64,000 nucleotides of DNA, taken from the NCBI GenBank assembly GCA_965113315.1, contig OZ220371.1; one strand, written 5' to 3'. The DNA is from Podarcis vaucheri (lineage: Eukaryota). The position numbers and the translations under genes were made by a program. Below the pieces are notes generated by a model. That model saw only the letters and a list, made by a program, of their open reading frames with translations. It had not been told where the DNA came from and ran no database searches. The first letter of the stretch is position 1, and the number at the start of each line of letters is the position of its first letter. Positions 28,489 to 57,720 of the stretch are shown piece after piece.

Positions 28489-28940
28489 TTTGCGTGTTGA
28501 GTCCCACAGTTGCCACCCCCCAAATAATTCACACTTCACACATCAATTTTTGTTTGGGTTTTTGGCATAATTTTTTGGCCACAACTTTATTCAATACAAA
28601 ATATGTGAGTGGTTGCTTAGGCACTGGTTATGACTATCTGTCCACGCCCTCAGGGACAGTGCTGGCATTCCGGACACCAGCGGAAGCCAGAGGCATTCCG
28701 GACACCAGCGGAAGCCTTAGTGGGAAACAAGTATTGGGTGAGAAAATGAAGCTGGGCAACAGTCCCTCACTTCTCACCCTCATGTTCCTTTGGGGCTTGC
28801 ACGGCCCAAGTCCGATGCCAGGGACAAGGACGAAAAGAATGGCAAGCCCCTGGATTCCTTTAACGGAATTCCCTTCGCATCATTTGGAGGGGTAGGCACT
28901 TACCCCTCCAAGAACCACCTTAACCAGTGCCTAACCGCCA
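28489..28940 (-). repeat. Ngaro split direct repeat B2 (3' terminus)
   Basis: Copy of B1; ends ...AACACGCAAA on the minus strand; minus-strand AATAAA at 28586-28591. Confidence 0.95.
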
Positions 28941-29115
28941 ACCTTACAAGTTGTGACGATTTGCTACGCAGTAGGCAAAAACCAAATGGCACCAGCCAAT
29001 CAGCCAGATGGCAAAATTCCTACTGTGCCCCCGCACCAAGGCAGACGACACCATGACAGGCATAGCAAGGTCAAGCGCTCAGGAAAAACCCCCCGTTAAA
29101 GGGAGGGAGGGCGGG

Positions 29116-29336
29116 TGATCCGAAGCAAACGGCCAAGAGGAAGTCCAACCCCTGGCTCCCTATATTTATAGACTCTAACTCCTCCCCTGAATTTAGCAAC
29201 ATACAAAACTCCCCAGCAACCCAATATTAGCCTTTTAACAGGCTTGGGGTTTTTCCTCACAACTGCCTAAATCATGGCAAGGTGGCATGTTTCCCCAACC
29301 GCAACCCGTGCTCTCTGGTTAGGGAGAACACGCTTT
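29116..29336 (-). repeat. Ngaro split direct repeat A2
   Basis: Copy of 35906-36126 (offset 6790); abuts B1 through a shared TTT. Confidence 0.95.
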
Positions 29337-29785
29337 GCGTGTTGAGTCCCACAGTTGCCACCCCCCAAATAATTCACACTTCACACATCAATTTTTGTTT
29401 GGGTTTTTGGCATAATTTTTTGGCCACAACTTTATTCAATACAAAATATGTGAGTGGTTGCTTAGGCACTGGTTATGACTATCTGTCCACGCCCTCAGGG
29501 ACAGTGCTGGCATTCCGGACACCAGCGGAAGCCAGAGGCATTCCGGACACCAGCGGAAGCCTTAGTGGGAAACAAGTATTGGGTGAGAAAATGAAGCTGG
29601 GCAACAGTCCCTCACTTCTCACCCTCATGTTCCTTTGGGGCTTGCACGGCCCAAGTCCGATGCCAGGGACAAGGACGAAAAGAATGGCAAGCCCCTGGAT
29701 TCCTTTAACGGAATTCCCTTCGCATCATTTGGAGGGGTAGGCACTTACCCCTCCAAGAACCACCTTAACCAGTGCCTAACCGCCA
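29334..29785 (-). repeat. Ngaro split direct repeat B1 (452 bp)
   Basis: Identical by eye to 28489-28940 (offset 845); minus-strand AATAAA at 29431-29436. Confidence 0.95.
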
Positions 29786-29813
29786 TGGAGCCATAAGCTC
29801 ACCGCCAAACCAC

Positions 29814-30388
29814 TCACAGCCCCAGCCAAGCCTTTAGCTTGGCCACCACTGCACCTAGCCAAGCCTCGTTCCCAGAGGCAGAAAGGTGCACCCCATCAGC
29901 CCTAAAAAGGGGCGCAGCTTGAAACAGAATCAAAGGATGGGAAATCACATCACCATCCAACTCAAAAATCCTCTTAGCCACCGCAGAATTGATGCGTTTT
30001 CTGGCCCTTTCTGTGGCTGCGGGGCAACGGCTGCCCACCCAACTGCGGCGTTGCAGTAACTTAGACCAGAATATTTTAGCCGACGGCACCAATGTTCGCA
30101 GCATCTCCAAGTCACTCAAAATTGCAGCACGAAGTGAGAGACAGTCCACGGATACCAGGTCGTTCTCACCCAGCTGTACCACAATAGCCGTGGGCGGCCC
30201 TTCCAAGAGCAGCTGCCTCCGAATCCTTGGCAGAAACTCTGACCAGCGCATTCCCCGCCTGGACACCCACGACAGCTGAACATGTGGAGGGAAGCCGAGA
30301 CCTGGACCCAGCCTAGACTGCCTTGCTGCGACTCCAGCCCAATGGATGATGCTGTGCCCCACCAACCATATGCGAACAGCCGCCAGAC
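29814..30388 (-). CDS. ORF4, SGNH/GDSL-type hydrolase (esterase) domain
   Basis: Block I IWLVGHS (Ser nucleophile), block II RRGMR, block III QLGENDL, block V DGVHLS. Catalytic Ser/Asp/His intact. Domain starts immediately after a polypyrimidine-CAG acceptor at 30390-30389. Confidence 0.88.
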
Positions 30389-30429
30389 CTGAGATAAACA
30401 AAAACAAACAGTATAAGAATCCAACAGTG

Positions 30430-31400
30430 TTAACGAACATAGCCCCGAAAGGCATCCGACTTCCAGCGCCCCAAATCCTTTATCCTAGCGGCCGACAAGC
30501 CCCAATGAGCAGCCATTGTTGCGGCCCCAATCCTGAAGGAGTGAGGGGCGAAACCATCCGACGTGCCGTCACAAGCGATAATCGCTTTACGCATCACCTG
30601 TGCAAACTGGTGTCTCGTCAGGGGCGACCCATTTTCATGTCTAAGCAAAGGCCCATCACCCGTGACGCGTACTGCTAAGTACTTACTAACATCCTTTACA
30701 GGGCAAGGGCCTGCTTCTCCCGTAGCAGGGAGACGAATGACGGCGCCCCTACCTTTCTGATCAGTCTTAGAATTTCTGACTGTGATCCTCAATTCTGCGG
30801 GGGTTAGCTGCACGTCCTTGAGCAAAAGGCCCCTGGAACGGCCATCCCTGTTGTTCTCCAAAACCAGCTCACCCACTCTCAGAGCTCCAAAAAAGGCAAT
30901 AGAAAAGGCAGCCGAAAAAAGGCGAGCCTCATACCCTGACCAGCATACCTCCCGCAGCCTCTTGCGCATCCTGCTCAACAAATCAAAGGAAATGGGGCAC
31001 CGTGAGGCTGGCTGGGACGGACGAAGTCTGCCCCAGCCTTCCAGGGCCCTGCGCACTATATGCTTCGCACAAGGGTCCTTATCATAAAATGTCTTACAGA
31101 AAAATGTTATGGCAGCCGCCTGTATCTTAATAGTTCTCGCTGCCCGCCCCAACTGAAATAAATGCGCCAAATACTTCAGCACCTGCGAGGAGGCGGGGGG
31201 AACACCCTCTAAATTAGAGGTTGTCCTGCGCATAAACGTCAAAAAATCAGTCCAAGCCTTTGTGTAAGACCTAAGGGTAGAAGGAGAAACCGAAGCCGCT
31301 ACTCCCTGCAAAACTAATTGCTGCCAAGGTTCCAGAGATGATCCGGGAAATATTCCGGACGAATCCGTGCCTCTGGAACCAGGAGTCTGAACCGCTCCAT
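30430..31400 (-). CDS. ORF3, tyrosine recombinase; no N-terminal ATG (ORF track starts it at TTG 31311; frame open from about 31419)
   Basis: Catalytic set R (ALRVGEL), K (SKTDQ), HxxR (HSFRIGAAT), W (LGRWKS) and Y (FRGYVR); N-terminal STLRSYTKAWTDF helix. Start placed at an inferred splice acceptor. Confidence 0.93.
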
Positions 31401-32906
31401 CTGAAAACGGGACAGAGCATCAGCAATATCGTTAGACACCCCAGGAATAAAACGTGCAGAAAACACTATATTATGACGTAGACAATGCAACACGAAGGCC
31501 TGCAATAAGGCCGACACCCTGGGAGAGCGTGATGACAGTTTTGCCAGCACGTTCACCACCGCCTGATTATCAGTCCAGAAGCAGACACGACGGTTCCTGA
31601 ATTCCTCGACCCACAAATGCACCGCCACTGCAATGGGAAAAAACTCGAGAAATGTTAGATCCCGTGTGATTCCTCCACCCTGCCACTCAGGCGGCCAACG
31701 CTCTGCACACCACCGTCCCTTCCAGTAAAGACCAAAACCCAGGGAACCCGCAGCATCTGATTGCACCTGGAAATCATTTTGCAAGTTTAGCGTATCTTGC
31801 CATAATGACACCCCATTGAATTCCTCCAGGAATTCCAGCCATATGGAAAGATCAGCCTTCACCTCCTTAGATAGGCGCACCCTATGATGAGGGGCCCTCA
31901 ACCCCACAGTAAGGCGAGCCAGGCGCGAACAGAAAGGGCGTCCAGGTGCCACCACCCTGCACGCGAAATTCAGATGCCCCAACAACGACTGCAGTTGTAA
32001 AAGAGATACTTTCTTCAACGGGAGGAGATCCTCTATGACCTTCTTCAAGGCTACTAGTTTGTCCATCGGCAAACTAGAGGTCTGGGCCACCGTATCCAAC
32101 AGGATACCCAAATATATAAGTCGGGTAGAAGGACCCTCGGTCTTTTCCGAAGCAAGCGGAACTCCCAGCTCCTGCGTAAGGTCAGCAAAGGCCTGCAGCA
32201 GCACCGAGCACTCACCAGTATCGTGGGCAGAGGCCAATAAAAAATCATCCAAATAATGCGTGACCCCGCCCAATCCTGTTTTAAATTTAAGGGCCCATTC
32301 TAGAAAGGTGCTAAATGATTCAAAAGCCGCGCAGGCTACTGAGCAACCCATAGGCATAGCCTTATCAAAGTAATACTTGCCCTCGAACTGAAAACCCAGT
32401 AGCCAAAAATCATCCGGATGAATTGGGAGAAGGCGAAATGCCGACTCAATGTCGCATTTTGCCAATAGAGCAGCGGGGCCGAACCTCCTAATCATCTTGA
32501 TCGCCTGATCAAGAGATGCATACTTCACAGAGCAAAGCTCTGGGGGGATGACATCATTAACTGAAGAACCCCTGGGATGTGACAAATTATGAATCAAACG
32601 AAATTCACCTGGAGCCTTCTTTGGGACAATACCCAATGGGGATACATGCAAATTATGAAAGGGAGGGGCATCAAAAGGCCCGGCCATCCGACGCATGGCC
32701 AGCTCCTTTGCAATCTTTCTGCGAGCGACGTCAGGTTGCTCACGAATCGATTTTTGGTTTGACGGATTCCGTGCCACGGGAGGCATGGCTACCGGAATCC
32801 GGAAACCAACAGAAAAACCATCCCTCAAATAATCTGCAGCAGCTCTGTCAGGATAAGACTGCAACCAAAGTTGCAGGGCCGGCAACCGCACCGGGGTATG
32901 AGCCAT
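31314..32906 (-). CDS. ORF2, reverse transcriptase / RNase H (530 aa from ATG at 32906; frame open back to 33146)
   Basis: RT motifs SPLGIVPKK, FRLIHNLS, KCDIESAFRLLP, MPMGC, HYLDDF and YLGI. RNase H motifs SDAAG, LEFFPI, TDNQAV and NDIADALSR, typical of DIRS/Ngaro pol. Confidence 0.95.
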   Translation of the reverse strand: MAHTPVRLPALQLWLQSYPDRAAADYLRDGFSVGFRIPVAMPPVARNPSNQKSIREQPDVARRKIAKELAMRRMAGPFDAPPFHNLHVSPLGIVPKKAPGEFRLIHNLSHPRGSSVNDVIPPELCSVKYASLDQAIKMIRRFGPAALLAKCDIESAFRLLPIHPDDFWLLGFQFEGKYYFDKAMPMGCSVACAAFESFSTFLEWALKFKTGLGGVTHYLDDFLLASAHDTGECSVLLQAFADLTQELGVPLASEKTEGPSTRLIYLGILLDTVAQTSSLPMDKLVALKKVIEDLLPLKKVSLLQLQSLLGHLNFACRVVAPGRPFCSRLARLTVGLRAPHHRVRLSKEVKADLSIWLEFLEEFNGVSLWQDTLNLQNDFQVQSDAAGSLGFGLYWKGRWCAERWPPEWQGGGITRDLTFLEFFPIAVAVHLWVEEFRNRRVCFWTDNQAVVNVLAKLSSRSPRVSALLQAFVLHCLRHNIVFSARFIPGVSNDIADALSRFQMERFRLLVPEARIRPEYFPDHLWNLGSN

Positions 32907-32919
32907 GACAGTCAAGAGC

Positions 32920-34443
32920 TCATTTTCCTGTACCTGGGGCAGGAGCGAGAGGGGTGTTTTGTTTGGGGGTTTGCTGAGAACCCCCTTTTCCGCCACGAAA
33001 GGGCCGCCGATTGCCAAAACAAGAGGAAGAGGGATGCGAACCACTGCATTTCTCGCAAATGTGGGCGTACCTGCACCCCTGTCGCTGACAAGAACCCTTA
33101 TTATAATCCCAGCATGGGAAACGGCGGCCAGTCCTAAAGGCCCCAATCTTCAACTTCTGCTGCTCCGTAGCCTTCTTGTCGATGAGCGGAGCCACATGGG
33201 TGGTCCACACATCGAGATCCTTACGATCCCATCGCGCTGAGGGAATCCTAGCGGCACGGCGCCTGAAGTTCTCATCATACTTTATCGCAGCTTTTTCACC
33301 AGCTTTGGTGAAAGCCGAGCGAACAATAGACAAGTAAACTATCAAATGAAGAGATCTCCGTGGGTAAGCCGCCACCACTACTCCAGCAAAGACCTGGAAA
33401 CAATCAAGCCAATGCTCGAAGGTCCTGTCCGCCGAGGGAGCGCCCTGGCGCTTCTTCGACGACTTCCCTCCCTCCTGGTCCTCAGAAGGAGGAGCCAATT
33501 TGAACATGTCCACAAAACGGCCGTTCAGAATCCTGGACCGCAGTCTTGTCGACAAATGCAAACCGGGGATAATGTCCCTCGCGGAATTGGTAGAGACTTT
33601 AACGTCAGGCACCAACGCGCCATCCCTACACTCTTGGACCGCCCCATACTTTGCACGGTGCGAGTTGGCCCTCCGATCCCAAGCCCACCGTGGCAGACCC
33701 GAGGCCGATTCTCCAAAACCCCAGTAAAGTTCCCTGGACTCGCCAGACTCATCGTCGGAGCTGGAGGATGACGTACCAGTATAAGAAGAAGATGATTCAC
33801 CCCTCCTTCGCTTGGCCCGTTTCCGAGAAGACCTTCTGCGGTGACGTTTTCCACCCGAAGACTTCCTGGCAGGAACTGGCAAGCTGTCTTCAATGGAGGA
33901 CTCGGAATCAGGGCTCAGCTGTGCTGCACCTAAAGCTGCTTGAGGAGACACAACAAGTGAAAGGCCGGAACCCGACGCCACCTCATCTGGAGATTGGACG
34001 TGCACACCTCGGCGGGCGGTAGCTGCCGAAATGTTTTGGTTCCCCGCAGCCCTCCTGGAGGAACGACGTGGCCTCCGTGAATGGCCACGAGGAGCAGGTA
34101 AGTCGCGGGGCTGGGTTAATTGAGAATCAGTCCTCAAACCCCTAGATGATCCATCTCTCCCCTCTTCACTAGATGACGGCGACACTGGGGACGACGCCAC
34201 CACGTGACGAGGACGCCTGCCAGACGTGGAAGGCTGAGCAGAGCAATGTTGAAGGAGGCCATCCATCTGGGCTGCGAAGCGAGACAAGGCCACTGGATCG
34301 CCGGCCATGCTTTCCACCAACGTTTGCACCCTTCCCGCCGGTTGACTCGGGGCGGGAGAGCGAAGCGCCTGTGATGGACCTCTAATAGGCCGTTTTGCAC
34401 CAGAAGCTGGGCTGGGATGAGCTGCAACCTTCTTAGGAGCCAT
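32920..34443 (-). CDS. ORF1, Gag-like nucleic-acid-binding protein (507 aa)
   Basis: ATG start; Ser/Arg-rich disordered N-half with a basic NLS-like tract (KRHRRRSSRKRAKRRR); C-terminal CWDYNKGSCQRQGCRYAH (CCCH) and CEKCSGSHPSSSC zinc knuckles; first ORF of the element. Confidence 0.88.
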   Translation of the reverse strand: MAPKKVAAHPSPASGAKRPIRGPSQALRSPAPSQPAGRVQTLVESMAGDPVALSRFAAQMDGLLQHCSAQPSTSGRRPRHVVASSPVSPSSSEEGRDGSSRGLRTDSQLTQPRDLPAPRGHSRRPRRSSRRAAGNQNISAATARRGVHVQSPDEVASGSGLSLVVSPQAALGAAQLSPDSESSIEDSLPVPARKSSGGKRHRRRSSRKRAKRRRGESSSSYTGTSSSSSDDESGESRELYWGFGESASGLPRWAWDRRANSHRAKYGAVQECRDGALVPDVKVSTNSARDIIPGLHLSTRLRSRILNGRFVDMFKLAPPSEDQEGGKSSKKRQGAPSADRTFEHWLDCFQVFAGVVVAAYPRRSLHLIVYLSIVRSAFTKAGEKAAIKYDENFRRRAARIPSARWDRKDLDVWTTHVAPLIDKKATEQQKLKIGAFRTGRRFPCWDYNKGSCQRQGCRYAHICEKCSGSHPSSSCFGNRRPFRGGKGGSQQTPKQNTPLAPAPGTGK

Positions 34444-34849
34444 GCCTGCTATGTAGAATCAAATGAGAATTAACAACTGCCGCAGGCCGGCGTCACTGCC
34501 GTACACCAACAATGAATTCCACAGGAATACAATAAGGCTGTGAAATGCTATAGCTAAACAAAATAATTACTATAGCAAAGAGTGTACTAAATCCAAAGGC
34601 GAACTATGTTATCTATCTATCTATCTATCTATCCAACCGAATTATATATTTATATAAGTATAAATGTACTATTTACTTATTCACGTATTCAATTATTATT
34701 ATTATTATTATTACTTTAAGAATTTAATATTTATTAATAATCAATTTTTTAATTATTTATCGAGTCAATGTACCTTACAATGAACGGTGTTTAAAACAGC
34801 AAAATTAATTGCACTCCCCACTTTTTCCAGCAGGGGGCAACCTGCCAGA

Positions 34850-35660
34850 CCGAGCTAGCACAACCAGTGCAGCGCTGCGTTGAGCCACAAGGGGGAGCTC
34901 CAGGCTGACAAGCTAGCTGCAACGCACAAATCGTCCAGGAGGGGGAGGCAGTCTAAAGGAACTGCTGCCAGCAAAAAATTCTCCTCCCGTGGCGGCGCGC
35001 CGCTAGCGGCAATAGACAGGCGGGCAGGGGCGCAGGCCGCGGTTCCCGACAACGGGGAAGCGGTCCCGACGTTTTCGCACAGGAGACAGGGGGAAGCCGC
35101 GAATAAAGAGGCCCGGCCCCCAGTACCGATCGCGCCGGCTCGGCGGCGGTAGCGCCGCCCGGGCCGAGCGCCCTCCCCACACGGCCTCCACTCACACCCC
35201 GCGCGGCCTGCAGGGACGGGCAAGATCCGCCTCCAAGCGGCGCCTCCCGAACCTCTGTAGGCCGAAAAGGCCCCTGATGCCGCCGGGGCTGGACGCAGGC
35301 CCCGCTCTCCGGCGCCTCCACGTGCCGCGCGGCCCACAAGGACACCCTCCCCACGGGCCTTACAAGCGGCTGAAACAGACTCCTTCCCTCCGCGGCGCTT
35401 GGAAGCCGCGAGAAGGTACAAAGTAGATGGGGGGGAAGGGGAGGTGGGGGGGTTCCGGAGCTCCGCGGGACCACTGCTAGGCCCGCGCGGCTCGTGAGAG
35501 ATGGGGGGGATGAAGTGGGATGGTGGGGAGGGAATATTGTTTTAAAAACCGGGCCCTGGCGGCAGCGGGCAGTCGGCTGCGGTCGCCCCGAAATTCGGTG
35601 GAAAACCGCTATGCCTAGCCCCAAGGCAGGGCCCGGCAGGCCGGGGGGGGGAACCCACCC
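34850..35660. promoter_or_regulatory. CpG-island-like GC-rich 5' leader of the Ngaro element
   Basis: Dense CpG and very high GC compared with CpG-depleted flanking DNA; lies between A1 and gag. Confidence 0.55.
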
Positions 35661-35905
35661 TCTAGCCTTGTCTATAAGCCCCTTCCTTTTCTTTTATTGT
35701 TTAAACTAAGAAGGGGCCCGAAGCGAGAAGAGAGGAATATAATTAAAAGGAAGATGGGGGGAGGGAAGAACGGGGGGGGGGTTGATGGGAGGGAATTAAG
35801 TAGATAAAGGGGAATTAAGGAGGAAAGGACGATTGCAACAGCAAACTAACTAGGCCCGGTAAAACCGAAAGTAGCAAAACAGTACAACCGTCTCAACGCA
35901 GCTCC

Positions 35906-36126
35906 TGATCCGAAGCAAACGGCCAAGAGGAAGTCCAACCCCTGGCTCCCTATATTTATAGACTCTAACTCCTCCCCTGAATTTAGCAACATACAAAACT
36001 CCCCAGCAACCCAATATTAGCCTTTTAACAGGCTTGGGGTTTTTCCTCACAACTGCCTAAATCATGGCAAGGTGGCATGTTTCCCCAACCGCAACCCGTG
36101 CTCTCTGGTTAGGGAGAACACGCTTT
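35906..36126 (-). repeat. Ngaro split direct repeat A1 (5' terminus, 221 bp)
   Basis: Identical by eye to 29116-29336; begins AAAGCGTGTTCTCCC on the minus strand. Confidence 0.95.
35925..35960 (-). promoter_or_regulatory. Putative TATA box and pyrimidine initiator in repeat A1 (duplicated in A2 at 29135-29170)
   Basis: Minus-strand TATAAATATA at 35960-35951, followed by CTTCCTCTT about 27-35 nt from the TATA start. The CTTCCTCTT motif is retained in the diverged solo unit near 23283. Confidence 0.5.
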
Positions 36127-56450: not shown

Positions 56451-57720
56451 TTATGTGCCTAGCCACAGAGTTGCCCTGCCTGATGTGCCTGACAGCTAAA
56501 TGAGTAAATGAATGGACACAACAACTGTCCAGGATTTAAAATGGCCACAACTTTATTGATTTCAGATGTAGGAAGCCTTGGCATAGACACTGGGGATCCC
56601 TCTCAGCCCCATGCTGGGGAACTGAGGCATGACAGGGTCTATTCGGGGGTGAATCCATCGCAAAATGCAGGTTTACACGGATGGGCCCCAAACACTGAAG
56701 GAAGCTCTATGGCCCGGTAGCCCTATGCAATGGGCTCTTTGGACAGAGACTTCCCTCCAGACCCCACTAGCGGGGTATCCTGTTGTTGCTGCTGCAGAGA
56801 ACAGGGAGTGGGTGAGTCATTGCTTCACCGCACCCCAACTAGATGAAAGACTATAGAATTCTGCCCAAGGCCTAAACTGCCACTCGAGACTGCCTACAGC
56901 TGGAACCACTCATTCAGGTCTATTACCCAATGCTCATTCCCCAAAGGGGAGAAATGGACACCATCAGGGTGAAATAGCTCAGGCATATCAGACTTGATGT
57001 CCTGGTATCAAATTACAGACTCCCGAAGACATTGCAAGGCCCTGTTGATCTTCACAAGGGAATAGTTAAGGTGTGTTGGTCTCAGTGCACCACACCTCTG
57101 ACAATGTGGGAAGAGCTCTGACCAGAAGATGCTCATAGATGGATACTCAGACCGCAGTTGTTCTGGGTCGGCAATTGCCGCCAGAGTCAAGTCCGCACTT
57201 TTACGCTTGACGAGGTCATTCTTGCCCAGTTGGAGGATCAGGGCATCAGGTGGGCTGTGACTGGTGATAGCTCTTTGGAGTGTAGGCAGAAGCGCATTCT
57301 ACCACATGTCGCGCTGACCTATCCAGAAGAAGTTGGCCTTGCTAGAAAGGCCCAGATGCGCTCCCCAGCATGTACAGGTAGCGTGCACACTTGCCCAATG
57401 GATGATACTGTGGTCAAGGACCCAAACCTGTCTGCGGGTAGTACCTGAAAGATATTTAAGAGGACTGTGTAAGGGACTGATATCCTAGGCGGACATATGT
57501 ATGCTCTGTCCACTGTGGAACGCCAGTGGCCCATGGCCTTAATGCAATCAGGATCCAGGCCCCTGGCTGCTGTAGAAATCACAGCCCCAATACAGAATGA
57601 GTGGCCAGAGAAGTAAATGGGCACCAACACATGCTGTGATGACCTTCCTCAAGATGGCCTGGGCAAGGGTAGCCTGTTAGAATGTACTGTATGAGAAGGG
57701 CGCCACAGTGGTCCAGCTGT
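56451..57720 (-). mobile_element. Degenerate 5'-truncated Ngaro relic (YR C-terminus, SGNH pseudogene 56894-57444, B repeat)
   Basis: Minus-strand peptides FSGHSFCIGA...MGHWRS...AY (YR) and VWVLDHSIIHWA, SIFWSEL, PDGVHFS (SGNH); AATAAAGTTGTGGCC near 56542-56556. Boundaries approximate. Confidence 0.85.

What the first reader, a model, noticed from the sequence alone, without database searches (positions are those of the whole stretch)
29814..32934. SGNH esterase of the Ngaro element appears to be expressed by splicing as a Gag-esterase fusion
Seen: ORF4 has no ATG before its catalytic Ser inside the domain. The domain starts exactly after TGTTTGTTTTTGTTTATCTCAG|GT (AG at 30390-30389), a phase-1 acceptor. 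The diverged relic has its own phase-1 acceptor at the same place (ATATCTTTCAG|GT ACT ACC...VWVLDHSIIHWA, AG at 57446-57445). Gag has phase-1 GT sites at CCAG|GTACAG (32934/32933, three codons before its stop) and CTG|GTACGT (33777/33776). Using the first removes RT and YR as a 2545-nt intron and gives a 694-aa Gag-SGNH protein. Known: SGNH ORFs occur in some Ngaro elements, and ORF1p of some L2/CR1/RTEX LINEs carries a fused SGNH esterase. Inference: this element builds the same architecture by alternative splicing, perhaps for membrane or lipid targeting of the RNP. Donor choice is uncertain because GTACAG is a weak donor.
Basis: partly seen in the sequence, partly recalled or inferred. Interest (0 to 1): 0.85.

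Follow-up and report, generated by a model that had tools for sequence, protein, structure and literature searches.

The report
Spliced Gag-leader esterase in lizard Ngaro
A young lizard Ngaro retrotransposon probably makes its fourth protein, an SGNH esterase, by splicing the first 222 codons of gag onto the esterase domain (413 aa, not the 694 aa first proposed), but this rests on gene predictions in related lizards and not on RNA reads.

Summary
The sequence features are real. The acceptor is TGTTTGTTTTTGTTTATCTCAG|GT, with AG at 30390-30389. A distant relic copy has an acceptor at the same codon (AG 57446-57445). Both phase-1 GT sites in gag exist.

- ORF4 does have in-frame ATGs upstream, at 30455 and 30440, overlapping the end of YR.
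- The favoured donor (32934, 694-aa product) has no support.

More than 25 public gene models in Podarcis muralis (two annotation releases), P. raffonei, P. lilfordi, Zootoca vivipara and Lacerta agilis join the gag N-terminus to SGNH at this acceptor. P0180 is gaplessly collinear with the window: gag 1-222 (87%), one Gly for the split codon, then SGNH (91%), total 413 aa.

Further support:
- Conservation among unspliced ORF4 homologues jumps from about 27% to about 75% at the junction.
- The part after the junction folds as a complete SGNH hydrolase (pLDDT 97.7).

I found no RNA evidence. No run on record as RNA holds the element, the contigs laid are unspliced, and no intron-blind Logan ORF spans the junction. 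The gene models remain predictions.

Verdict: splicing about 60% likely, with the donor corrected. It is a new variant of a known kind. No paper in the searched library describes splicing in Ngaro.

The parts
28489..36126 (-). Whole Ngaro element: A1 (36126-35906), 5' leader, gag, RT/RH, YR, SGNH ORF, B1 (29633-29334), A2 (29336-29116), spacer, B2 (28788-28489)
   Evidence: A1=A2 (221 nt) and B1=B2 (300 nt) are both 100% identical. ORFs. Pfam RVT_1 E 1.7e-10, weak Phage_integrase and SAM-like hits, Lipase_GDSL_2.
33777..34443 (-). Proposed coding exon 1: gag ATG (34443) through codon 222 plus the first base (G33777) of codon 223. Basic (pI 11.9), Ser/Pro/Arg-rich Gag N-terminus ending in GGKRHRRRSSRKRAKRRRGESSSSYT.
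   Evidence: P0180 residues 1-222 align without gaps to this stretch (87%) and stop exactly at its end. Composition.
33771..33776 (-). Donor GTACGT (exon|intron = CTG|GTACGT), phase 1
   Evidence: Sequence. Best-scoring phase-1 GT in the gag ORF and rank 6 of 328 GT sites upstream of the acceptor on a rough matrix. Gag relatives keep G|T(S) or G|M(S) here, that is GTACGT or GTATGT.
30389..33776 (-). Proposed 3388-nt intron: gag codons 223-507, all of RT/RH and all of YR, plus the two ORF4 ATGs
   Evidence: Follows from the donor and acceptor coordinates. Not shown by reads.
30389..30417 (-). 3' splice signals: candidate branch point CTTAT (A at 30414, 25 nt upstream), T-rich tract 30410-30391, CAG with AG at 30390-30389
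   Evidence: The tract has 16 of 20 pyrimidines, 14 of them T. It ranks 5 of 451 AG sites in the element and is the most T-rich.
29814..30388 (-). Proposed coding exon 2: GT completing the Gly codon, then 190 codons of SGNH hydrolase (GHS Ser, GEND, DGVH) and TGA at 29816-29814
   Evidence: P0180 residues 224-413 align without gaps (91%). AlphaFold2 pLDDT 97.7, with beta-1 starting 3 residues after the junction. Foldseek hits TesA/TAP, sialate O-acetylesterases, PAF-AH and the ZfL2-1 ORF1p esterase.
30438..30455 (-). In-frame ATGs of ORF4 (30455-30453 and 30440-30438) inside the last YR codons: the rival start sites
   Evidence: Both Met positions recur in unspliced homologues P0003, P0006 and P0016.
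32928..32934 (-).
   Evidence: Rank 31 of 328. Preceded by 17 of 20 pyrimidines, so it looks like an acceptor. No gene model uses it.
56897..57714 (-). Relic of a distant Ngaro family (YR C-terminus + SGNH only) with an acceptor-like CTTTCAG|GT (AG 57446-57445) at the homologous codon
   Evidence: tblastn gives SGNH 34.5% and YR 33%. Sequence. Tract 14 of 20 pyrimidines. GHS is DHS and the frame is broken.

Best explanation
The full-length Ngaro transcript is alternatively spliced. The donor lies in gag codon 223 (CTG|GTACGT, 33777|33776). The acceptor lies 23 codons into ORF4 (CAG|GT, 30389|30388). The 3388 nt removed carry the rest of gag, RT/RH and YR.

Translation from the gag ATG (34443) then gives a 413-aa protein. 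It consists of the basic, low-complexity N-terminal 222 residues of Gag, one Gly from the split codon, and a complete, catalytically intact SGNH esterase. The Gag part includes the conserved SIEDSLPVPARKSSGGKRxRRRSSRKRAKRRR patch, which looks like a nuclear-localisation or arginine-rich RNA-binding motif.

Shown here: the signals, their phase compatibility, their position at conservation and domain boundaries, and collinear gene models in relatives. Inferred: that the splice happens in vivo; that the shared Gag leader brings the esterase to wherever Gag and the RNP go; and that the esterase acts on lipids or membranes, or on O-acetyl groups, as proposed for the ZfL2-1 LINE ORF1p esterase.
For: Gene models:
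- more than 25 predicted proteins have the gag N-terminus followed by SGNH. In most of them the SGNH match starts at ORF4 residue 21-22, which is the acceptor.
- They come from P. muralis, in both the old (LOC1146...) and new (LOC1443...) annotation releases. They also come from P. raffonei, Zootoca vivipara and Lacerta agilis, and from P. lilfordi (CAI5782151.1, not an XP_ model).
- Junction strings read ...SSSSY(T/A/S)G|LAAVRIW.
- P0180 (413 aa) matches window gag 1-222 (87%, no gaps), then one Gly, then window SGNH codons 24-213 (91%, no gaps).
- diverged families keep the same layout of leader, basic patch, then SGNH. P0028 and P0029 have 48-49% SGNH identity. The gecko models P0042 and P0067 have about 40%.
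- P0028 is listed with isoforms X2 and X3.

Sequence and structure:
- in 12 unspliced ORF4 homologues, identity to the window is 14-43% in the 14 residues before the junction and 63-85% after it. The step falls exactly at G23. The residue before G is S, L, P or V, all compatible with an NNA codon that keeps the AG.
- 33777 is the best phase-1 donor in gag.
- the acceptor is the most T-rich in the element, and a comparable one sits at the same codon in a relic only 34.5% identical.
- the post-junction part alone is a complete SGNH fold.

General knowledge: a fourth ORF about 5.7 kb from the element's 5' end is not reached by scanning ribosomes, so some subgenomic RNA is expected.
Against: - There is no RNA evidence. 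The look-up of sequencing runs found no holder on record as RNA.
- The four runs laid are contigs that look like DNA. They run unspliced across 30389, and the 15 joints shown include none at 33777/30388. Another 50 joints were not shown.
- All junction-spanning proteins are gene predictions. None of the Logan ORFs, which are called on contigs without intron modelling, spans the junction. Logan holds only unspliced 198-243-aa ORF4 forms and gag of about 506 aa.
- Later annotations may have copied earlier models by protein alignment, so the models are not 25 independent observations.
- Gnomon also joins YR-internal donors to the same acceptor (P0007, P0008, P0015). This shows that some models may be frame-rescuing constructs.
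- ORF4 has its own conserved in-frame ATGs.
Confidence: 0.6

Rival explanations
1. ORF4 is translated on its own from ATG 30455 or 30440, giving a 213- or 208-aa protein. Its first ~22 residues (MPFGAMFVNTVGFLYCLFLFIS) would form a hydrophobic signal or anchor. The T-rich 'acceptor' would simply be Phe/Leu/Ser codons. Access would come by reinitiation after the overlapping YR stop, by an internal promoter, or by another splice that lands upstream of the ATG. This may coexist with the spliced form.
For: - The ORF is open from 30455, with two in-frame ATGs.
- The same two Met positions recur in P0003, P0006 and P0016. NCBI and Logan list 201-216-aa stand-alone forms.
- The N-terminal 22 aa have GRAVY 1.71.
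- Xenopus Ngaro ORFs are described as four overlapping ORFs (PMC9210276).
- ATG 30440 lies 8 nt before the YR stop, a layout seen in termination-reinitiation.
Against: - The ATGs are formed by YR codons D-A and Y-V, so their conservation may be a by-product.
- The N-terminal peptide is poorly conserved and varies in length, with the step exactly at the AG.
- ATG 30455 has C at -3 and C at +4, a weak context.
- The relic's ATG is closed by a TAG, though the relic is decayed.
- A fourth cistron far from the cap is rarely translated in vertebrates.
Confidence: 0.22
2. The fusion is an annotation artefact. Gene finders stitched the nearest in-phase open frame carrying an ATG (gag or YR) to the SGNH domain. 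The models then spread between annotations by protein alignment. The true route of expression of the esterase would be unknown, or the esterase would be made as a YR-SGNH product from short-intron splicing (for example C|GTAAAG at 30591 to 30389).
For: - Several different donors are used with one acceptor: P0007 and P0015 (...SKTDQRG|), P0008 (...QFAGVMR|) and P0012 (a later gag donor).
- A Xenopus model (P0087) also joins a truncated YR to SGNH.
- No Logan ORF spans the gag-SGNH junction.
- P. lilfordi names show that proteins of other species were used in its annotation.
Against: - The gag-SGNH junction already appears in at least four loci carrying older gene ids (LOC1146...), numbered below those of the other lacertid genomes, so probably from the first P. 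muralis annotation.
- From general knowledge of the RefSeq pipeline, RefSeq normally does not keep unsupported ab initio models.
- Diverged families show the same layout.
- The YR-internal donor at 30591 scores very poorly (-4.4, rank 136 of 328).
- The conservation step and the relic's acceptor do not depend on any gene finder.
Confidence: 0.15
3. One reading: donor CAG|GTACAG at 32934|32933, a 2545-nt intron, and a 694-aa protein with nearly all of Gag fused to SGNH.
For: The site exists and is phase-compatible.
Against: - Weak donor, 0.61 bits on the rough matrix and rank 31 of 328.
- Acceptor-like surroundings.
- None of the gag-SGNH models examined (at least 27) carries gag residues beyond about 236. 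The searches had length windows of 117-372, 203-645 and 159-505 aa, so only the unrestricted representative search could have returned a 694-aa form. Among its best 150 hits it showed none with full Gag.
Confidence: 0.03

Closest known systems
Four-ORF Ngaro elements with an SGNH hydrolase ORF after YR (Goodwin & Poulter 2004 as cited in PMC9210276; Xenopus DIRS-53_XT and DIRS-54_XT)
   Same: Same order of gag, RT/RH, YR and SGNH. Same split direct repeats A1...B1-A2-B2. ORFs overlap. The hydrolase has 'no proven function'.
   Different: The literature treats the hydrolase as a separate fourth ORF. No paper in the searched library describes splicing or a Gag-leader fusion.
Esterase-containing ORF1p of CR1/L2, RTEX and Penelope elements (ZfL2-1 ORF1p, PDB 4c1b; PMC3905857)
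   Same: An SGNH esterase with an intact catalytic set, attached to the element's RNP-forming protein. It has a very basic surface (domain pI 11.3 here). Foldseek finds 4c1b at E 1e-6 and 20% identity.
   Different: In LINEs the esterase is part of one continuous ORF1, next to a coiled coil. Here it would be joined by splicing, and only to the disordered Gag leader. The closest solved folds are TesA/TAP and sialate O-acetylesterases, not 4c1b (rank 44). Common descent is not shown.
Spliced subgenomic mRNAs of retroviruses and some LTR retrotransposons (env mRNAs; copia gag mRNA). From general knowledge, not tested here.
   Same: One primary transcript serves as genome and as pre-mRNA. An internal intron removes pol-type genes so that a distal ORF is brought near the cap.
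   Different: The donor lies inside gag at codon 223, so 222 Gag residues are shared. That is far more than the few codons some retroviruses share. The element is a tyrosine-recombinase retrotransposon, a group in which I found no report of this.

Membership tests
Ngaro (DIRS-order YR retrotransposon) | Split direct repeats A1 ... B1 A2 B2 | tested here: met
   A1 36126-35906 equals A2 29336-29116, and B1 29633-29334 equals B2 28788-28489. Both pairs are 100% identical.
Ngaro (DIRS-order YR retrotransposon) | RT/RNase H plus a tyrosine recombinase instead of a DDE integrase; no methyltransferase domain | tested here: met
   RVT_1 scores 41.4 bits, above its cutoff. Phage_integrase and SAM-like hits are weak (E 7e-4 and 1.4e-3) and below cutoff. 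No methyltransferase hit. YR relatives in molluscs and amphibians match by BLAST.
SGNH/GDSL hydrolase | Flavodoxin-like alpha/beta/alpha fold with five parallel strands | tested here: met
   AlphaFold2 pLDDT 97.7. Foldseek probability 1.00 to TesA, EstA, sialate O-acetylesterase and PAF-AH.
SGNH/GDSL hydrolase | Catalytic Ser (block I), Gly (II), Asn (III), Asp-x-x-His (V) | tested here: met
   GHS, GEND and DGVH are present. S12, G45, N75, D164 and H167 are at least 90% conserved in 45 sequences.
SGNH/GDSL hydrolase | Pfam gathering score | tested here: not met
   Lipase_GDSL_2 scores 24.8 bits against a cutoff of 32.9. Sequence search of PDB found nothing. Membership rests on the fold and the motifs.
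Retroelement accessory gene expressed from a spliced subgenomic mRNA | Consensus-like donor, branch point, pyrimidine tract and AG in compatible phase | tested here: met
   The matrices are heuristic and written from memory, not MaxEntScan.
Retroelement accessory gene expressed from a spliced subgenomic mRNA | Junction-spanning RNA reads or cDNA | tested here: inconclusive
   No run on record as RNA holds the element. The contigs laid are unspliced and DNA-like. No Logan ORF spans the junction. Only gene models do.
Retroelement accessory gene expressed from a spliced subgenomic mRNA | Splice sites conserved across family members | tested here: inconclusive
   The protein-level junction is conserved in five lacertid species. 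An acceptor is present in the relic.
LINE ORF1p-type esterase fusion | Esterase in the same polypeptide as the element's RNA-binding or oligomerising module | tested here: inconclusive
   The fusion would carry only the basic, disordered Gag leader. The Gag core and zinc knuckle (residues 444-475) are excluded.

The most novel reading that the evidence does not exclude
Squamate Ngaro elements may use one phase-1 'leader' donor in gag (33777|33776) for several downstream acceptors. These would be the SGNH acceptor (30389|30388) and the phase-1 acceptor TTTTCAG|AT (31402|31401) in front of the ATG-less YR frame. The recombinase and the esterase would then both be made as fusions to the same 222-aa Gag leader. 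That would be retrovirus-like complex splicing in a tyrosine-recombinase retrotransposon. The spliced RNAs would keep both terminal repeats and so could be mobilised as non-autonomous copies.
Probability: 0.12. Interest if true: 0.8.

Novelty: new variant of a known kind. Interest (0 to 1): 0.6.

Why it matters
How YR retrotransposons express their distal ORFs is essentially unstudied, and the Ngaro hydrolase has 'no proven function' (PMC9210276).

If the splice is real, it shows three things:
- A DIRS-order element uses host splicing to make a subgenomic mRNA, as retroviruses do.
- The esterase is physically tied to a Gag targeting module. This arrives by a different route at the architecture of esterase-bearing LINE ORF1 proteins, and it strengthens the idea that SGNH esterases serve the RNP itself (membrane or lipid steps).
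- Dozens of 'uncharacterized protein LOC...' entries in lizard annotations are products of this one transposon transcript.

The hypothesis is directly testable with existing lacertid RNA-seq.

Tried and rejected
RNA test:
- The look-up of sequencing runs gave no run on record as RNA.
- Read laying on 30000-35999 with X1, X5, X7 and X9 gave only contigs. They are DNA-like and unspliced across 30389. The short joints shown are non-canonical, and no 33777/30388 joint appears among the 15 shown. This neither supports nor refutes splicing.

Other attempts:
No genomic DNA of other copies could be fetched, so there is no nucleotide-level test of donor and acceptor conservation and no dN/dS for the 66 nt upstream of the acceptor.
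- A junction-focused protein search (P0001 residues 50-140) was run to find intron-blind Logan ORFs spanning the junction. It found none.
- PDB sequence search gave nothing useful.
- The AlphaFold2 model of full Gag was poor (pLDDT 39). It only hints that residues 69-244 lack secondary structure, so I did not use it as evidence for a domain boundary.
- Literature searches for Ngaro plus splicing, intron or subgenomic found nothing relevant.
- I looked for Gag-leader-YR fusions among the P0011 hits and found none.

Left out on purpose:
- I did not build, translate or search a joined (spliced) sequence. The exons were searched and compared separately by reference.
Full report
**What is there**

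The finding lies inside a 7,638-bp Ngaro retrotransposon on the minus strand (36126 to 28489).
- Its split direct repeats are perfect. A1 36126-35906 equals A2 29336-29116, and B1 29633-29334 equals B2 28788-28489, both at 100%. The insertion is therefore very young.
- The ORFs are gag 34443-32920 (507 aa, CCCH/CCHC knuckle near the C-terminus), RT/RH 33146-31314, YR 31311-30430, and an SGNH ORF 30455-29814.

**Checking the observation**

These points hold in the sequence:
- The acceptor TGTTTGTTTTTGTTTATCTCAG|GT has its AG at 30390-30389. 'GT' at 30388-30387 completes a split codon, and CTG at 30386 follows. A CTTAT branch-point candidate lies 25 nt upstream.
- The relic copy at 57714-56897 is only 34.5% identical in SGNH protein. 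It has CTTTCAG|GT at 57446-57445 with the same spacing to the conserved Trp.
- Gag has phase-1 GT sites at 32934|32933 and 33777|33776.

One statement is wrong. ORF4 is open from an ATG at 30455 and has a second in-frame ATG at 30440. Both lie upstream of the acceptor and inside the last YR codons.

As a bare motif the acceptor is not rare. There are 19 comparable sites on both strands of the window, about five of them in the element. What stands out is where it lies.

**Relatives**

A search with ORF4 returned many lacertid gene models. Their match to ORF4 begins at residue 21-22, which is the acceptor, and they carry something else in front.
- Reading the sequences shows the gag N-terminus joined as ...KRAKRRR.(D/E)SSSSY(T/A/S)G|LAAVRIW(L/M)VGHS.
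- In the window gag this string is ...KRAKRRRGESSSSYTG|TSSSS.
- P0180 (P. muralis LOC114600493, 413 aa) aligns without a gap to window gag 1-222 (87%) and to the 190 codons after the acceptor (91%). One Gly is left for the split codon G|GT.
- The window element would give 222 + 1 + 190 = 413 aa, from a 3388-nt intron.
- Such models occur in P. muralis under both old (LOC1146...) and new (LOC1443...) gene ids, and in P. raffonei, Zootoca vivipara, Lacerta agilis and P. lilfordi.
- More distant families show the same layout of leader, basic patch, then SGNH. P0028 and P0029 have 48-49% SGNH identity, and the gecko Paroedura picta models P0042 and P0067 have about 40%.
- No model uses the donor at 32934.

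**Evidence that does not depend on gene finders**

- Twelve unspliced ORF4 translations from NCBI and Logan are 14-43% identical to the window in the 14 residues before the junction and 63-85% after it. The step is at G23. The residue before G is S, L, P or V, each compatible with an NNA codon that preserves the AG.
- On a rough donor matrix written from memory, 33777 is the best phase-1 GT in gag (rank 6 of 328). The donor at 32934 ranks 31st and sits behind 17 of 20 pyrimidines plus CAG|G, so it looks like an acceptor.
- The 190 residues after the junction fold alone into a complete SGNH hydrolase (pLDDT 97.7, with beta-1 three residues after the junction).
- Ser, Gly, Asn and Asp-x-x-His are conserved.
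- Structural neighbours are TesA/TAP, sialate O-acetylesterases, PAF-AH and, at rank 44, the ZfL2-1 LINE ORF1p esterase 4c1b.
- The Gag leader is basic and of low complexity (pI 11.9, 74% disorder-promoting residues). The full-Gag model was too poor to use.

**What is missing**

- No public run on record as RNA holds the element.
- The four runs laid are contigs that behave like DNA. They cross 30389 unspliced and show no 33777/30388 joint among the joints listed.
- No ORF called on Logan contigs, which are read without introns, spans the junction. This held even in a search aimed at it.
- The models are predictions, and some may have been propagated between annotations.
- Gnomon also joins YR-internal donors to the same acceptor (P0007, P0008, P0015). 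This fits either a real, promiscuously used acceptor or frame-rescuing by the gene finder.

**Mechanism and odds**

- Most likely (about 0.6): alternative splicing from 33777|33776 to 30389|30388 gives a Gag-leader-SGNH protein of 413 aa.
- A stand-alone ORF4 product from ATG 30455 or 30440, with a hydrophobic N-terminus, remains possible (about 0.2) and could coexist with the spliced form. Its ATGs are conserved, but they are built from the YR codons D-A and Y-V.
- Annotation artefact or another route: about 0.15.
- The 694-aa form: about 0.03.

**Comparison with what is known**

- Four-ORF Ngaro elements with an SGNH ORF are known, and the hydrolase has 'no proven function' (PMC9210276; PMC7192593).
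- Esterase-bearing LINE ORF1 proteins are known and are thought to act at membranes (PMC3905857).
- Spliced subgenomic RNAs are known for retroviruses and some LTR elements (general knowledge).
- I found no report of splicing in Ngaro or DIRS elements.
- I therefore class this as a new variant of a known kind, still awaiting RNA proof.

I built and searched no joined sequence. The exons were handled separately by reference.

Noticed in passing
window 31398-31422 (minus strand): The YR frame opens right after a TGA at 31422-31420 and has no ATG for about 60 codons. An acceptor-like CCCGTTTTCAG|AT (AG 31402-31401) lies 6 codons into it. It is in phase 1, so it is compatible with the same gag donor at 33777. 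However, I found no Gag-leader-YR gene model among the P0011 hits.
   Followed up: partly
window 30591|30590 and the YR codons for SKTDQKG (about 30750): Gnomon models in P. muralis join YR-internal donors to the same SGNH acceptor. These are P0008 (...QFAGVMR|LSAVRIW) and P0007 and P0015 (...SKTDQRG|...). A Xenopus tropicalis model (P0087) likewise joins a truncated YR to SGNH. These may be cryptic splicing or gene-finder constructs.
   Followed up: partly
Its phase would continue the gag/YR frame.
   Followed up: no
window 56897-57714: A 5'-truncated relic of a distant Ngaro family, with only the YR C-terminus and SGNH (33-34.5% identity). Its frame is broken and the catalytic GHS has changed to DHS.
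   Followed up: partly
window 34444-35905: An unusually long (about 1.46 kb), GC-rich (about 55%) leader lies between A1 and the gag ATG. Depth of related contigs in other runs drops sharply here, so this part seems the least shared between copies and species.
   Followed up: no
proteins P0074 (Mytilus trossulus), P0102 (Haliotis rufescens): Mollusc gene models carry YR and SGNH in one continuous protein. In P0102 the full YR C-terminus runs straight into SGNH. The esterase may therefore be attached to different partners in different Ngaro lineages.
   Followed up: no
protein P0023 (Sphaerodactylus townsendi LOC125439779, 3112 aa, isoforms X1-X5): A gecko gene model has six SGNH repeats related to the Ngaro esterase. 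It could be a host gene built from, or ancestral to, the transposon domain, or a chain of transposon copies.
   Followed up: no
window 30000-35999 in runs X5, X7, X9: Three further coded organisms hold hundreds of contigs 85-99% like the element, most densely over RT/RH and YR. The family is abundant and shared among related species.
   Followed up: no
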